From positions 124,001-188,000 of IMG/VR virus record IMGVR_UViG_3300022744_000022: DNA of 64,000 nucleotides; one strand, written 5' to 3'. The translations under genes and the position numbers were made by a program. Within the stretch, counting starts at the first letter, position 1. The number at the start of each line of letters is the position of its first letter. This document shows positions 15,074 to 25,613 of this stretch, one piece after another. Under the pieces are notes generated by a model. The model had not been told where the DNA came from. It did no database searches and saw only the letters and a list, made by a program, of their open reading frames with translations.

Positions 15074-15201
15074 CGTGGCCTCCACCTAGTCATGTGCGTG
15101 AGCGGGCTGAAAATTGCAGACGACCTGCGTTTTCTTTCGAGCCCCACAACCTGGTTGCCGAATACCAAAGTCCTTTCGGGGGTTTGTGAAATAGTTTCGA
15201 T

Positions 15202-15222
15202 TTTTGGTTGCCTGTACCAAAA
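15202..15222. promoter_or_regulatory. NrtR operator (21-bp palindrome, GT-N7-AC)
   Basis: TTTTGGT-TGCCTGT-ACCAAAA, 21 nt before nrtR start; degenerate second copy at 15152-15169. Confidence 0.75.
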
Positions 15223-15243
15223 GACATGGTGTAAGTAACCAAT

Positions 15244-16410
15244 ATGCAATCGGCAGAACTAACGCTGTACCCCGAAACAGCAGCGATTTACTTCCTGCTC
15301 GACGGGGTGCAGGTCGTCTACGTGGGGCAAACCCAAGATCTACGGAATTCCTTTCAAATTCAGCGCCACCTGGAGAAAACCTATCAACGGGTGCGGTATG
15401 TGCCTGTTGGTAAAGCCGACTTAGATGCCGTCGAGATGGCCTGCATCGTGTACTTCAAGCCAAAGTACAACCGTATGCGCCATACGAAAAAGATCTCCGC
15501 TGAACAAGCTGAGACCAAAGTGCGGCGATTGCTCTCTGACGACGATCTTGACCAACTCGGAGTGACTCGCCGTGCTCCTTGTAAGTACGAGTATGATTAC
15601 CCACGCCCCTCAGTCACCGTAGACTGTGTGGTGTTTGGTTTCGATCTTGCCGACAAGAGAGACCCCCTCAAGGTTCTCCTGATCCAGCGTAACTCGGAGC
15701 CTTACGCAAAATGCTGGGCTATCCCCGGAGGATTCGTTGAAACCAACGATATTGGTGGGGGTGAGAGCCTTGAAAGGGCTGCTCAGCGTGAGTTGGAAGA
15801 GGAAACTGGCCTTCGTTTAGAGTTTGAACAACTCCCCCCTTCCTCACAGACACATGTACCGCATGTGTTAAAAGACGGGACGACCCTTCCCCCTAACTGG
15901 TACCCCGATGACGAACCGCGACACGTGCCCGCCTATTTAGAGCAACTCTACACTTTCGGTGCGCCTCGACGTGATCCGCGTGGTCGGGTGATCTCAGTAG
16001 CCTATCTCGTATTGGTGCGTGCCGCAGACTACGTACCACAGGGTGGATCAGATGCGAGCCAAGCCAAGTGGGTGGGCATTCAGGACGCTCTAACTCGAAA
16101 CTTAGCGTTTGATCACGCTGAGGTTCTAAGTAAAGCGATCACCCGACTCCAAGGTAAGATCCGCTACGAACCGATCGGATTCAATTTGTTACCCGACGAA
16201 TTCGCACTCTCGGACTTGCGGGATCTCTACGCGGGCGTTTTGCAACGCGAACTGGACCTGTCGAACTTTCGCAAGCGCGTGTTGGCCACCGGGGTGCTAT
16301 CGGAGACAGGCCACCTGACCGAAGGTTCTGGGCGGCCCGCAGCACTCTACCGCTTCAACAAGACCGCATACGACCAAGCCGTCAAAACCGGCTTCAACTT
16401 CGAGATCTGA
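15244..16410 (+). CDS. nrtR: NrtR regulator (Nudix + wHTH) with N-terminal GIY-YIG-like domain
   Basis: IYFL...YVGQT...E...PKYN; YPRPSVTVDCVVF; RELEEETGL Nudix box; NFRKRV...GRPAALYRF wHTH. Confidence 0.88.
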   Translation: MQSAELTLYPETAAIYFLLDGVQVVYVGQTQDLRNSFQIQRHLEKTYQRVRYVPVGKADLDAVEMACIVYFKPKYNRMRHTKKISAEQAETKVRRLLSDDDLDQLGVTRRAPCKYEYDYPRPSVTVDCVVFGFDLADKRDPLKVLLIQRNSEPYAKCWAIPGGFVETNDIGGGESLERAAQRELEEETGLRLEFEQLPPSSQTHVPHVLKDGTTLPPNWYPDDEPRHVPAYLEQLYTFGAPRRDPRGRVISVAYLVLVRAADYVPQGGSDASQAKWVGIQDALTRNLAFDHAEVLSKAITRLQGKIRYEPIGFNLLPDEFALSDLRDLYAGVLQRELDLSNFRKRVLATGVLSETGHLTEGSGRPAALYRFNKTAYDQAVKTGFNFEI

Positions 16411-16423
16411 AAGAGGTGTGATC

Positions 16424-23904: not shown

Positions 23905-24531
23905 TCACAAGTCGTCTTCGTCCTCTAGAGCAGCCCACAAGCCGCCGCCGCTGCCCCGGAGTTGGTTCTGCATCACACGTTGAAGTGGTGTGACGGCTTT
24001 GAACATGGCCTCCCGTCCAGAGTCATCGGGGACGGTCAGCGTAAAGAGCATCACGGAGTGCGTTTCATCGAGTAGCGTCAGAAGCCGGGTGCCTTCTTTG
24101 GGGCCAGGATCGAAGATGAAGTGGAGCCGCCAAACCCCACCGCCCGCACCCTGCTGGTTCTGGAACCCAGTCACCACGTGGTAGGGCTCGTCCGAGAGGG
24201 GCTCTGCTTGATACTGCGTCCCAATGGCTCGCAACCGAACGGCGAGATCCGACGAGTTTGCCAGCCCGAGGTTCCGCTCTCTAGTTTCTTGTATCACCTG
24301 CTCGGGGGTCTTCTTCACGGGGACGTGCAGGATCGTCTCCATGTATTCGTGGACACCCTGCGTCACTTTCGCTTTTGGGGTGGCCGTGTAGCTGATCGTC
24401 CGATTCCGTGGGTGCTCTTGGTGTAGTAACCCATTAGCCTTGCCCTGGACCCCCATGGTCCGGATCACGATCACCGTCGGACATTCCTCAGGGTTCAACC
24501 GAATCGGCCTACGTGTGACATCGATGAGCAC
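23905..24531 (-). CDS. Hypothetical protein ending LWAALEDEDDL
   Basis: GGTGTA 9 nt before GTG 24531. Confidence 0.75.
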   Translation of the reverse strand: MLIDVTRRPIRLNPEECPTVIVIRTMGVQGKANGLLHQEHPRNRTISYTATPKAKVTQGVHEYMETILHVPVKKTPEQVIQETRERNLGLANSSDLAVRLRAIGTQYQAEPLSDEPYHVVTGFQNQQGAGGGVWRLHFIFDPGPKEGTRLLTLLDETHSVMLFTLTVPDDSGREAMFKAVTPLQRVMQNQLRGSGGGLWAALEDEDDL

Positions 24532-24555
24532 CCCCTGTACTACACCGAACGGACT

Positions 24556-25110
24556 ATGAAAGACCTCCGGACAACCGAATTTGTGCGCGCCTGGGGCGTC
24601 AAGGATGTGCCCACGGCGTCAGTCTCCCACGGGGCTGTACGTCCAGGCAGTTACCCGGCGTTCGCCTTGCTGGGCTGGGTGGAGCAGCGGAAAGCGGGCT
24701 GGCCCGTCGTGGGGCTCCGCCTGACCTTGCTCCAGAACGAGCTAGACGAGCCTGCTGGCGGGCTCACGATGGGCCTACCGCTCACGCCAAAGAGCGAGCG
24801 GCACGTCTGCTGCTTCTTGCAGGACCTAGGCTGGGATGGCCGCGTGTGGCCGTACAAGGACCATGGGTGGCCCGAGGGTACGCCCGATGAGGACGGCTTG
24901 CTACTCCTACTCAAGGCATCCAAGCTCGGGGCCACCCTGACGTTCCCCTCGGACCCCGAGAAGGGTACCCCGACAGTCAGGATCCCAGTGCTGCAACGAA
25001 CCGGGACCTTCTCGGTGGCACCCTTCGGCGAAGAAATCGTGCCCCGGTACCTCGATGCTCTCAGGACCCTTGCGGCAAACCCCACACCATTCAAATCGGA
25101 TTGGGCATGA
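24556..25110 (+). CDS. Hypothetical protein
   Basis: 184 aa, ATGA coupling to NADAR. Confidence 0.75.
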   Translation: MKDLRTTEFVRAWGVKDVPTASVSHGAVRPGSYPAFALLGWVEQRKAGWPVVGLRLTLLQNELDEPAGGLTMGLPLTPKSERHVCCFLQDLGWDGRVWPYKDHGWPEGTPDEDGLLLLLKASKLGATLTFPSDPEKGTPTVRIPVLQRTGTFSVAPFGEEIVPRYLDALRTLAANPTPFKSDWA

Positions 25111-25613
25111 CCATCAGCTTCTATGGGGAGACCAACGAGCGGTACAGTTGGCTCTCGAACTTCCACGTGGCGATCTTCACACTCCAAGGGCACCAATGGG
25201 CTTCGACGGAACACTTCTACCAAGCCATGAAGTCTGAGGACCCCGAGGTTCAGCTCCAGATCAGGAGCGCCGCGACCCCGGGACAGGCTAAGCGGTTGGG
25301 TTCCAAGTGTGAACGGCGTGCTGATTGGGAAGAACCCGTAGGTACCCCTGCGTTGCACGACATTTTTCGAGATGACCGGGGGATCGTGGTGGAACTCGTG
25401 AAGGACCACTTCATGTACCAAGCGCTCACCGCGAAGTTCACGCAACGTCCCGAGCTACGTGAGGCGTTGATCTTGACGGGCACTGAGGAGCTGCAAGAAG
25501 CCTCACCCAAGGACTACTACTGGGGCGTGGGAGCCGACGGTTCGGGGCAGAACAAGCTCGGTCGAATGCTCCAGCTCGTGCGGGCTCAACTACCGAACCG
25601 CTGGTCACCGTAG
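25107..25613 (+). CDS. NADAR (YbiA-like) family N-glycosidase
   Basis: WLSNF...STEHFYQAMK...AKF.Q...L..TG...E.SP.D.YWG.G..G.GQNKLGRML. Confidence 0.92.
   Translation: MTISFYGETNERYSWLSNFHVAIFTLQGHQWASTEHFYQAMKSEDPEVQLQIRSAATPGQAKRLGSKCERRADWEEPVGTPALHDIFRDDRGIVVELVKDHFMYQALTAKFTQRPELREALILTGTEELQEASPKDYYWGVGADGSGQNKLGRMLQLVRAQLPNRWSP

What the first reader, a model, noticed from the sequence alone, without database searches (positions are those of the whole stretch)
15152..25613. ADP-ribose-sensing, operator-controlled NAD+ rebuilding regulon: an inducible NARP2-like counter-defence
Seen: a perfect 21-bp GT-N7-AC palindrome 5 nt upstream of the GGTGTA element, then a same-strand run of nrtR, nadV, radical SAM, vWA, PurA-like, kinase and CinA/NMNAT-like genes, with NADAR nearby. 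Established: NrtR repressors bind 21-bp GT-N7-AC sites and are released by ADP-ribose; phage Nampt + Nmnat (NARP2) rebuild NAD+ after Thoeris/SIR2-type NADases produce ADPR and nicotinamide. Inference: the phage detects the defence's own product and switches on the antidote. The Nudix box (RELEEETG) is intact, so ADPR could also be recycled to ribose-5-P and AMP. I know of no described sensor-gated version in phage.
Basis: partly seen in the sequence, partly recalled or inferred. Interest (0 to 1): 0.87.

Follow-up and report, generated by a model that had tools for sequence, protein, structure and literature searches.

The report
Repressor-controlled NAD+ salvage operon in jumbo phage
A 208-kb environmental phage carries a bacterial-type NAD+ salvage operon complete with its own NrtR repressor and two conserved operator boxes, so its NAD+ rebuilding is probably switched on by a signal rather than always on, and the repressor is also fused to a nuclease domain not reported for this family.

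Summary
The site at 15202-15222 is a GT-N7-AC inverted repeat with 7-bp arms. A matrix built only from homologous loci ranks these two boxes first and second in the 64-kb window. The same pair sits at about -42 and -20 in all eight related phage loci and in a bacterial locus. All the gene calls were confirmed.

New findings:
- NrtR carries an N-terminal GIY-YIG nuclease domain with its catalytic residues intact.
- The 400-aa protein is a CinA-fold domain that lacks the NMN-deamidase Ser/Lys dyad, fused to a NadD-type adenylyltransferase.
- The core nrtR-nadV-cinA*/nadD is a bacterial (Myxococcota-like) operon. In the phage, unrelated modules (rSAM; vWA/PurA-like/kinase) are inserted into it.
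- NADAR lies behind an opposite-strand gene and has no convincing box.
- Similar NrtR-headed NAD clusters occur in at least 13 IMG/VR giant-phage contigs, in Bacillus phage G and in a 636-kb phage.

ADP-ribose sensing and a counter-defence role are inferred by homology and were not tested. I rate this a new variant of a known kind, of moderately high interest.

The parts
15183..15195 (+). Conserved upstream motif yTTGyrAAATAGT, a candidate promoter element or further binding site
   Evidence: Present in 5 of the homologous loci and aligned. It occurs once in the window without mismatch. Its function is unknown, and the sigma-70 scan found no promoter in 14800-26500.
15202..15222 (.). NrtR box 1: TTTTGGT-N7-ACCAAAA, perfect 7-bp arms
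   Evidence: Top PWM score in the window, 21.6 bits. The GT and AC cores are invariant in the 8-locus alignment.
15224..15244 (.). NrtR box 2 (core TGGT-N7-ACCA at 15227-15241).
   Evidence: Second PWM score in the window, 16.2 bits. The GT...ACC core is invariant. The 22-bp spacing from box 1 is kept in all loci.
15244..15564 (+). GIY-YIG nuclease domain, the N-terminal ~107 residues of the NrtR ORF
   Evidence: 600 homologues at E<=1e-3. 25 of 36 aligned homologues hit Pfam GIY-YIG. The profile hits the UvrC GIY-YIG domain at E=2.9e-6 and T4 endonuclease II. Y16, Y26, G28, H42, E64 and N76 are invariant.
15595..16410 (+). NrtR core: Nudix-like effector domain (Nudix box around 15730-15813) plus the NrtR winged-helix DNA-binding domain (around 16177-16356)
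   Evidence: Pfam NUDIX 3e-17 and NrtR_WHD 2.7e-21. NCBIfam NrtR 1.3e-43, below the equivalog cutoff. PDB matches: AraR, 2fml and Shewanella NrtR 3gz5. Cellular homologues are ~50% identical.
16418..17866 (+). nadV, nicotinamide phosphoribosyltransferase (Nampt)
   Evidence: Pfam NAMPT_N plus NAPRTase. NF006629, 545 bits. phrog_448 at 5e-136. It directly follows nrtR in all relatives but L009, where two small ORFs intervene.
17885..18811 (+). RlmN/Cfr-like radical SAM methyltransferase, an inserted module not tied to NAD
   Evidence: TIGR00048 RlmN at 3.5e-29, below cutoff. CPVGCRFC and GGCGQL motifs are present. It is absent from L003 and from the bacterial operon.
18826..18963 (+). Small Pro/Glu-rich ORF (45 aa) that fills the apparent gap
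   Evidence: Read directly from the sequence. L013 has a 63-aa ORF at the same place.
18993..19970 (+). vWA-fold protein (phrog_2971)
   Evidence: AlphaFold pLDDT 86.3. Foldseek matches integrin I-domains, the SpaC vWA domain and TFIIH Ssl1. It has a DxTGS MIDAS-like motif. A Labilithrix homologue is named VWFA by UniRef.
20193..21521 (+). Divergent adenylosuccinate-synthetase-like protein (PurA/PurZ superfamily)
   Evidence: Pfam Adenylsucc_synt 3.9e-66. PurA models score 185 bits against a cutoff of 402, and the PurZ model 39.6 against 300. The GDEGKG loop is present.
21470..22705 (+). Ser/Thr protein kinase-like protein. The true start is probably downstream of 21470.
   Evidence: Pfam Pkinase 1.1e-7. 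phrog_3043 at 6.6e-44. It forms a trio with the vWA and PurA-like genes in Labilithrix luteola.
22702..23904 (+). Fusion of a CinA/PncC-fold domain (residues 1-~200, catalytic dyad absent) with a NadD-type N(a)MN adenylyltransferase (residues ~205-360)
   Evidence: AlphaFold pLDDT 89.5. The top 21 Foldseek hits are all CinA/PncC. The profile hits NadD 1kam at E=3e-8. GxFxPxHxGH, PPHK and SSTxxR are invariant. PncC S29 aligns to Ala and K61 to Ser. It is the third gene of the bacterial operon.
23905..24531 (-). Conserved opposite-strand ORF (208 aa, no family) that marks the end of the same-strand run
   Evidence: Genes at the same position on the opposite strand occur in L003 and L005. No family hits.
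24556..25110 (+). Unknown 184-aa protein, always paired with NADAR
   Evidence: No family hits. Homologues precede NADAR in L003, L005, L023, L029 and L030.
25101..25613 (+). NADAR-domain protein in a separate unit with no convincing NrtR box
   Evidence: Pfam NADAR 2.6e-31. TIGR02464 at 5e-29. The nearest box-like site, 24416-24436, scores 12.4 bits, which is shuffle level.

Best explanation
This is a phage-borne copy of a bacterial NrtR-controlled nicotinamide-salvage operon.

Shown:
- The first gene encodes an NrtR-family protein (Nudix-like domain plus NrtR winged helix).
- Two GT-N7-AC inverted repeats 22 bp apart end at its start codon. They are the only conserved elements of the upstream region across diverged relatives.
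- Nampt follows 8 nt downstream.
- A NadD-type adenylyltransferase fused to a CinA-fold domain closes the same-strand run.
- The compact three-gene version, with the same two boxes, exists in a bacterial genome.

Inferred:
- NrtR dimers occupy both boxes and shut off the promoter. The promoter probably overlaps the boxes, because there is no Shine-Dalgarno sequence and the distance to the ATG is fixed, which would fit a leaderless or near-leaderless transcript.
- Because nrtR is the first gene of the unit, the circuit would give an initial burst on infection and then self-repression.
- ADP-ribose, released when NAD+ is cleaved by host NADase defences or by the phage's own NAD-consuming enzymes, binds the Nudix domain and releases NrtR.
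- Nampt then makes NMN from nicotinamide and PRPP, and the NadD-like domain adenylylates it to NAD+.
- The CinA-fold domain keeps its phosphate-binding residues but not the Ser/Lys dyad. It more likely binds or hands over the mononucleotide than deamidates it.
- The intact Nudix helix may let NrtR also hydrolyse ADP-ribose, ending the signal.

The net effect would be a NARP2-type NAD+ rebuild that is feedback-limited and signal-inducible instead of constitutive. What the fused GIY-YIG nuclease domain adds is unknown.
For: - Domain calls.
- Operators: two of the four TGGT-N7-ACCA sites in 64 kb lie here. A PWM trained on the other loci ranks them first and second, and the top score exceeds every shuffle.
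- Conservation of the boxes: they sit at about -42 and -20 in window, L003, L005, L007, L008, L009 and L010, and in L013 and bacterial L012. The GT/AC cores are the invariant columns of the upstream alignment.
- Co-variation: arm sequences differ between lineages but stay symmetric, for example CCATGGT..ACCATGG three times in L032 and TGTGT/GGTGT..ACACC in L021/L024.
- Synteny: nrtR-nadV(-...)-cinA*/nadD in phage contigs and in a 2.7-Mb bacterial contig.
- NadD assignment: profile E=3e-8, with invariant HxGH, PPHK and SSTxxR motifs.
- CinA fold.
- Literature: the 21-bp GT-N7-AC motif, tandem sites at prs-nadV, release by ADP-ribose, and the link between an intact Nudix signature and ADPRase activity are in PMC2330246. 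NARP2 = Nampt + Nmnat, constitutive, PRPP-consuming, costly and toxic in E. coli, per bioRxiv 10.1101/2024.02.11.579819.
Against: - No promoter or transcription start was identified. The sigma-70 scan found none in 14800-26500.
- The effector was not tested. The best PDB sequence match is the arabinose sensor AraR, the NCBIfam NrtR equivalog model scores 149 bits against a cutoff of 400, and a Corynebacterium homologue binds DNA better with NAD+ (PMC6800001).
- A self-encoded repressor cannot keep the operon silent at the moment of entry.
- The NadD-like domain's preference for NMN or NaMN is unknown. If it needs NaMN, a deamidase and NadE are required, the CinA-like domain lacks the dyad, and I identified no NadE or Prs among the window ORFs I scanned.
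- Whether the boxes control genes beyond nadV is unknown, because foreign modules are inserted and no terminators or internal promoters could be mapped.
- The same operon in bacteria shows that it need not be about defence.
- The host is unknown and the phage is uncultured.
Confidence: 0.6

Rival explanations
1. Auxiliary metabolism rather than a defence sensor. The phage captured a host NAD homeostasis operon whole, and the repressor and operator simply came with it. The operon tops up NAD+ for the phage's own NAD-consuming enzymes (ADP-ribosyltransferases, RNA-repair phosphotransferases, ligases). Any ADP-ribose signal then comes mainly from those enzymes.
For: The identical three-gene operon with two boxes exists in a bacterial chromosome. 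Relatives carry ART-PolyVal, Macro and NADAR genes nearby. Bacillus phage G places its NrtR-like gene with PncA, PncB, NadD and the NAD-consuming KptA. The window is rich in RNA-repair genes.
Against: NARP2 genes were shown to overcome Thoeris and other NADase defences, so the enzymatic core would counter such defences whatever its 'purpose'. Retention of the repressor and operators across diverged phages argues that regulation is selected for, which fits a costly pathway needed only at times. The two readings are not mutually exclusive.
Confidence: 0.3
2. The effector is not ADP-ribose. For example, NAD+ could act as co-repressor (as reported for Corynebacterium NdnR), or another nucleotide or a defence signalling molecule could be sensed. 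The operon would still turn on when NAD+ falls, but through a different signal.
For: Effectors differ within the family: arabinose for AraR, which is the best PDB match, and stronger DNA binding with NAD+ for NdnR. The Nudix domain here has a 5-residue loop insertion and, in the window clade, a further ~39-residue insertion. The NrtR equivalog model is not met.
Against: The characterised NrtRs next to nadV operons respond to ADP-ribose. The genomic context is NAD salvage, not sugar use.
Confidence: 0.2
3. The GIY-YIG-NrtR fusion is primarily a site-directed endonuclease that uses the NrtR winged helix as its targeting domain. It would be homing-endonuclease-like, or aimed at host or rival-phage nrtR loci. 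The boxes would be its recognition sites, and autorepression a side effect, as known for I-TevI at its own operator (my own knowledge).
For: The catalytic GIY-YIG residues are invariant across fused homologues of 42-64% identity. The domain was added exactly between the operator and the old N-terminus, because relatives with short NrtR keep the same boxes. Its closest relatives are small free-standing GIY-YIG proteins. A free-standing GIY-YIG/NUMOD1 gene sits next to nadV in another giant phage.
Against: The locus is syntenic and stable rather than mobile-looking. Relatives with a short NrtR have the same operon and boxes, so regulation does not need the nuclease. No cleavage site can be inferred, and self-cleavage at its own operator would have to be avoided.
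Confidence: 0.15
4. The inverted repeats are chance or structural features with no regulatory role.
For: The arms are A/T-rich. The exact 14-base pattern occurs in more than 100 unrelated IMG/VR contigs.
Against: Position, spacing and symmetry are conserved across loci whose flanking sequence is not. The boxes take the top two PWM ranks in 64 kb.
Confidence: 0.03

Closest known systems
Bacterial NrtR-regulated nadV operons (Shewanella oneidensis nrtR / prs-nadV, Synechocystis nadM-nadV; Rodionov et al. 2008, PMC2330246)
   Same: A Nudix plus winged-helix repressor, 21-bp GT-N7-AC operators in tandem, a nicotinamide-salvage target and autoregulation. The phage operon matches a Myxococcota-like bacterial nrtR-nadV-cinA*/nadD operon gene for gene.
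   Different: It is carried on a 208-kb phage contig and has no prs. Foreign modules are inserted into it. The repressor has an intact Nudix catalytic helix, which the characterised NrtRs lack, and an extra N-terminal GIY-YIG domain.
NARP2 of Vibrio phage KVP40 (Nampt + Nmnat; bioRxiv 10.1101/2024.02.11.579819)
   Same: A phage-encoded Nampt together with a mononucleotide adenylyltransferase, which rebuilds NAD+ from nicotinamide, PRPP and ATP.
   Different: The KVP40 pathway is described as acting regardless of defence activity and as costly, with no regulator. Here a repressor and operators head the operon. From my own recollection, the KVP40 adenylyltransferase is NadM-Nudix type. Here it is NadD-type fused to a CinA-fold domain. 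Neither activity nor anti-defence effect was tested here.
PncC/CinA NMN deamidase (AtCinA 2A9S, E. coli PncC; PMC5384747)
   Same: The fold matches (Foldseek probability 1.0, TM about 0.7 to the target). The phosphate-binding Ser and Tyr are conserved.
   Different: The catalytic Ser aligns to Ala in the window protein (Thr, Ser or Ala across the family). The general-base Lys is absent in every homologue aligned. The domain is fused to NadD.
I-TevI and other GIY-YIG homing endonucleases (own knowledge)
   Same: An N-terminal GIY-YIG catalytic domain, a linker and a C-terminal sequence-specific DNA-binding domain, with binding at an operator in front of its own gene.
   Different: The DNA-binding part is a ligand-sensing NrtR, not a NUMOD/HTH module. 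There is no evidence of mobility or cleavage.
NrtR-like genes in other giant phages (Bacillus phage G gp273; uncultured phage LR756504)
   Same: An NrtR-like gene heads a phage NAD salvage cluster.
   Different: Phage G uses PncA/PncB/NadD, and no GT-N7-AC box was found upstream. LR756504 uses a Nudix-fusion protein plus Nampt. Neither has the GIY-YIG fusion. Phage G gp273 is annotated only as a MutT/NUDIX hydrolase, and the LR756504 record carries no annotation.

Membership tests
NrtR transcription factors | [quoted passage not shown] | tested here: met
   Pfam NUDIX 3e-17. Aligns to the Nudix domains of 2fml, AraR and Shewanella NrtR.
NrtR transcription factors | C-terminal NrtR-type winged-helix DNA-binding domain | tested here: met
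   PF21906 NrtR_WHD 2.7e-21, covering the full model length.
NrtR transcription factors | 21-bp GT-N7-AC palindromic operators upstream of NAD metabolism genes | tested here: met
   Two boxes that are conserved in position and symmetry across 9 loci and rank first and second by an independent PWM.
NrtR transcription factors | DNA binding relieved by ADP-ribose | not testable with these tools
   Homology only. Effectors vary within the family.
NrtR transcription factors | Score above the NCBIfam equivalog cutoff (NF050029) | tested here: not met
   149 bits against a cutoff of 400. The model is narrow. Insertions and the extra domain lower the score.
NARP2 (phage Nampt + Nmnat NAD+ reconstitution) | Phage-encoded Nampt | tested here: met
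   NF006629 at 545 bits against a cutoff of 405. phrog_448 at 5e-136.
NARP2 (phage Nampt + Nmnat NAD+ reconstitution) | Phage-encoded NMN adenylyltransferase | tested here: inconclusive
   A NadD-type domain with invariant HxGH, PPHK and SSTxxR motifs; the profile hits NadD at E=3e-8. Preference for NMN or NaMN cannot be read from the sequence. The other cytidylyltransferase-fold gene, 11730-12281, is CoaD and not an NMNAT.
NARP2 (phage Nampt + Nmnat NAD+ reconstitution) | Restores NAD+ and overcomes NADase defences | not testable with these tools
   Needs expression with Thoeris, DSR or SIR2-HerA in laboratory strains.
PncC/CinA NMN deamidase | CinA C-terminal domain fold | tested here: met
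   The top 21 Foldseek hits are all CinA/PncC, with probability 1.0.
PncC/CinA NMN deamidase | Ser/Lys catalytic dyad (AtCinA S31/K63 = E. coli S29/K61) | tested here: not met
   S29 aligns to Ala23 and K61 to Ser55 in the alignment with E. coli PncC. No aligned homologue has Lys there. The role of the dyad is from PMC5384747.
GIY-YIG nucleases | GIY...YIG motifs plus the conserved Arg/His, Glu and Asn | tested here: met
   Y16, Y26, G28, H42, E64 and N76 are invariant. R34 is Arg, or Lys in one homologue. Transitive Pfam GIY-YIG hits in 25 of 36 homologues. The profile hits UvrC at E=2.9e-6. The window sequence alone gets no Pfam hit.
GIY-YIG nucleases | DNA cleavage activity | not testable with these tools
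   Needs an in vitro nuclease assay.
PurZ (2-aminoadenine genome pathway) | Score above the NCBIfam PurZ model cutoff | tested here: not met
   39.6 bits against a cutoff of 300. The PurA models score higher (185 bits) but are also below their cutoff.

The most novel reading that the evidence does not exclude
The GIY-YIG-NrtR fusion is a metabolite-gated, operator-targeted nuclease. The NrtR module would direct a working GIY-YIG endonuclease to GT-N7-AC boxes in rival phages that lack the insertion, or in the host's own NAD regulon. ADP-ribose would control when it is on DNA. At its own operator it would act only as a repressor, as I-TevI does. That would be a homing or weapon nuclease built on a small-molecule sensor.
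Probability: 0.15. Interest if true: 0.85.

Novelty: new variant of a known kind. Interest (0 to 1): 0.62.

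Why it matters
Published phage NAD+ reconstitution pathways (NARP1 to NARP3) are described as unregulated enzyme sets. NARP2 in particular is reported to be costly because it drains PRPP even when no defence is present. A version headed by a ligand-sensing repressor with conserved operators would be an example of a phage anti-defence or metabolic module that is feedback-limited and possibly induced by the product of the defence itself. 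It gives a directly testable system: one protein, one 50-bp probe and a few metabolites.

The survey here suggests this is not a one-off. NrtR-headed NAD clusters recur in many environmental giant-phage contigs and in Bacillus phage G, where the gene is annotated only as a Nudix hydrolase. The GIY-YIG-NrtR architecture and the dyad-less CinA-NadD fusion are new protein architectures whose activities are open questions.

Tried and rejected
- Megablast of the whole cluster against deposited phages found nothing.
- Pfam on the NrtR N-terminus alone found nothing useful. The GIY-YIG call needed the all-against-library search and transitive hits.
- A single-sequence PDB search of the CinA-like domain found nothing, so E. 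coli pncC was fetched from the K-12 record to make the alignment.
- PADLOC gave only generic kinase, Nudix and NADAR hits.
- I considered 11730-12281 (cytidylyltransferase fold) as the real NMNAT and rejected it: it is CoaD.
- I considered PurZ and a Z-base genome for the PurA-like gene. The PurZ model is far below its cutoff.
- I looked for amber read-through in the operon because of the CUA-anticodon tRNA. None of the operon genes is interrupted.
- A scan of IMG/VR for the exact 14-base palindrome returned more than 100 unrelated contigs, so it carries no information except that the window's own contig was listed once.
- The contig of the closest free-standing GIY-YIG homologue was too short to show context.
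- The sigma-70 promoter scan found nothing in the region. My leaderless-promoter reading rests only on the missing Shine-Dalgarno sequence and the fixed box-to-ATG distance.
- The Shewanella NrtR structure paper (PMC2896262) is not held, so ADP-ribose contact residues could not be checked.

Full report
**Source of the window.** The window belongs to IMG/VR contig IMGVR_UViG_3300022744_000022, which is 208 kb. The same NrtR protein is also on record on a 291-kb contig. G+C is about 0.59 throughout. No deposited phage matches at the DNA level. The window holds no structural hallmark gene among those I scanned. It does hold many phage-family and RNA-repair genes: RtcB, an RNA ligase, a CCA-adding enzyme, an amidase and an HNH endonuclease. 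That it is viral therefore rests on the IMG/VR classification and on syntenic contigs of 96-267 kb.

**The operator.** Positions 15202-15222 have perfect 7-bp inverted arms (TTTTGGT/ACCAAAA) around a 7-nt spacer.
- TGGT-N7-ACCA occurs four times in 64 kb against 0.87 expected, and two of the four are these sites.
- In every one of seven diverged loci that encode a full-length homologue, two GT-N7-AC sites sit at about -42 and -20 from the start codon, 22 bp apart.
- The same holds in a relative with a short NrtR (L013) and in a bacterial locus (L012).
- In an alignment of the upstream regions, the invariant columns are essentially the GT and AC cores of the two boxes and the ATG.
- A weight matrix built without the window's own sites ranks the two boxes first and second in the whole window. 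They score 21.6 and 16.2 bits, against an average shuffle maximum of 12.9 and a largest shuffle value of 17.4.
- In more distant IMG/VR loci the arms change but stay symmetric. L032 has three perfect CCATGGT-N7-ACCATGG sites, and L021/L024 have a pair with TGTGT/GGTGT...ACACC arms. Symmetry kept through sequence change is what a dimeric DNA-binding protein would produce.
- This matches the published NrtR motif: 21-bp symmetry, a GT-N7-AC core, and tandem sites at Shewanella prs-nadV (PMC2330246).
- No other site in the window rises above the shuffle background. The next best, 24416-24436, scores 12.4 bits.

**The repressor.** The 388-residue ORF has a Nudix domain and the NrtR winged-helix domain, and it aligns to AraR, 2fml and Shewanella NrtR structures. 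Its nearest cellular relatives are about 240 residues long and about 50% identical. Those that carry a name are Myxococcota (Stigmatella, Polyangiales).
- The catalytic Nudix helix is intact (E-x7-REUxEExGU). R182, E183, E186 and E187 are invariant across phage and cellular homologues.
- The G-x5-E spacing carries a 5-residue insertion that the cellular homologues share.
- The window clade has a further insertion of about 39 residues after the helix.
- Characterised NrtRs with degraded signatures are inactive as hydrolases, whereas NuhA, which has an intact signature, is an active ADP-ribose pyrophosphatase. Hydrolysis is therefore possible here but unproven.

**An unreported domain.** Residues 1 to about 107 are absent from cellular NrtRs and from phage L013, but they are conserved in nine homologues and in IMG/VR loci L025 and L026.
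- A search of 1.8 billion representative proteins found 600 relatives, mostly small proteins.
- 25 of 36 aligned relatives are recognised by Pfam as GIY-YIG.
- Their profile hits the UvrC GIY-YIG domain (E=2.9e-6) and T4 endonuclease II.
- The catalytic set (two Tyr, His, Glu, Asn, and an Arg that is Lys in one homologue) is conserved.
- The boxes keep the same distance to the ATG with or without this domain. The domain was therefore added exactly between the operator and the old N-terminus.
- I found no description of such a fusion.

**The enzymes.**
- nadV is a clear Nampt. Its start lies 8 nt after nrtR here and overlaps or abuts it in relatives.
- For the 400-residue product of 22702-23904, an alignment of 50 homologues has invariant GxFxPxHxGH, PPHK and SSTxxR motifs. 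Its profile hits NadD structures at E=3e-8, ahead of PPAT.
- The AlphaFold model is confident (pLDDT 89.5). Its N-terminal half matches only CinA/PncC structures among the top 21 hits.
- Aligned with E. coli PncC, the phosphate-binding Ser46 and Tyr56 are conserved. The catalytic Ser29 aligns to Ala here, and the general base Lys61 is Ser here and is never Lys among the aligned homologues. The role of the dyad is from PMC5384747.

**Origin and architecture.** A 2.7-Mb bacterial contig carries nrtR-nadV-cinA*/nadD as a compact three-gene operon with two boxes.
- In the phages, extra genes sit between nadV and the last gene. These are an RlmN/Cfr-like radical SAM enzyme, a vWA-fold protein, a divergent PurA-like protein and a kinase.
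- L005 has only the rSAM gene inserted, and L003 lacks it.
- The kinase-vWA-PurA-like trio stands alone in the Labilithrix luteola chromosome.
- These are therefore separate modules riding in the operon, not NAD genes.
- The same-strand run ends at 23904. A conserved opposite-strand gene follows, and then a 184-residue unknown protein with NADAR.

**How common it is.**
- An IMG/VR scan found 189 relatives of the Nudix/NrtR protein.
- Of 31 loci with a full-length NrtR-like gene, mostly on contigs of 100-600 kb, 13 have nadV directly downstream. Nine of those also have the CinA*-NadD gene, and several carry the vWA-PurA-kinase trio.
- Bacillus phage G has an NrtR-like gene, annotated as a MutT/NUDIX hydrolase, ahead of PncA-like, PncB, KptA and NadD genes.
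- The 636-kb phage LR756504 has NrtR, a Nudix-fusion protein and Nampt, with a GT-N7-AC pair in front of the enzyme genes.
- The NARP papers I read and the NAD/ADPr virus survey describe no regulator of phage NAD reconstitution. NARP2 is described there as active regardless of defence, as consuming PRPP, and as toxic in E. coli.

**Mechanism.** The components and the operator are shown. The rest is inferred: occupancy of both boxes, repression, release by ADP-ribose, NMN adenylylation to NAD+, and use against NADase defences. Because nrtR is the first gene of the unit it controls, the circuit is a negative feedback loop that a signal can open. It is not a switch that is off at entry. The main alternatives are a captured homeostasis operon that serves the phage's own NAD-consuming enzymes, a different effector, and a primary nuclease role for the fusion protein.

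**Verdict.** I rate it a new variant of known kinds (NrtR regulons, NARP2) with interest about 0.6.

Noticed in passing
window 10711-10783 (+): A tRNA gene with a CUA anticodon (an amber suppressor, which ARAGORN labels Pyl). The NADAR ORF ends in TAG with the same frame open beyond it. ORF 61704-62768 ends in TAG and is followed by about 410 open codons in frame that run to the window end.
   Followed up: partly
window 11730-12281 (-): A phage-encoded phosphopantetheine adenylyltransferase (CoaD): TIGR01510 at 163 bits against a cutoff of 103, and PDB PPAT at E=2e-39. A Pfam CTP_transf_like gene of similar size sits at the same relative position in L003, L005 and L013. It is a CoA-pathway gene, not an NMNAT.
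   Followed up: yes
window 18993-22705; L016 6829-10399 (Labilithrix luteola CP012333): A vWA-fold protein, a divergent PurA-like protein and a Ser/Thr kinase travel together in phages and as a stand-alone trio in a myxobacterial chromosome. Their function is unknown and there was no PADLOC match.
   Followed up: partly
window 17885-18811 (+): A phage RlmN/Cfr-family radical SAM methyltransferase that lacks the N-terminal domain. It has the CxxxCxxC and GGCGQL motifs. Its target (rRNA or tRNA) is unknown.
   Followed up: no
window 26345-27529 (-), 44457-45104 (+), 50656-52074 (+), 30221-31198 (+): An RNA-repair gene set: CCA-adding enzyme, RNA ligase, RtcB and a metallophosphoesterase. It suggests countermeasures against tRNA-cleaving defences.
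   Followed up: no
window 15183-15195: The motif yTTGyrAAATAGT is conserved upstream of box 1 in five loci, at a variable distance from the boxes. It occurs once in the window without mismatch. It could be a promoter element or a binding site for another factor.
   Followed up: partly
window 24416-24436 and 14531-14545: Two weaker box-like sites. The first scores 12.4 bits and lies inside the opposite-strand ORF about 120 nt upstream of the NADAR unit. The second is TGGT-N7-ACCA inside the amidase gene. Both are at chance level.
   Followed up: partly
L018 10681-11415 (-) (uncultured phage LR756504): A free-standing GIY-YIG/NUMOD1 homing-endonuclease gene lies immediately next to nadV in another giant phage that also has an NrtR gene.
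   Followed up: no
L005 2402-2917, 5005-5541, 18713-20482: A relative's locus carries Macro, nucleoside 2-deoxyribosyltransferase and ART-PolyVal (ADP-ribosyltransferase) genes around the same operon. The phage lineage therefore both makes and removes ADP-ribose marks.
   Followed up: no
L032 ~7940-8000 (IMGVR_UViG_3300022744_000001, same metagenome as the window): Three perfect CCATGGT-N7-ACCATGG palindromes, overlapping at 15-nt steps, sit upstream of a compact nrtR-nadV-cinA*/nadD operon on a 448-kb contig.
   Followed up: no
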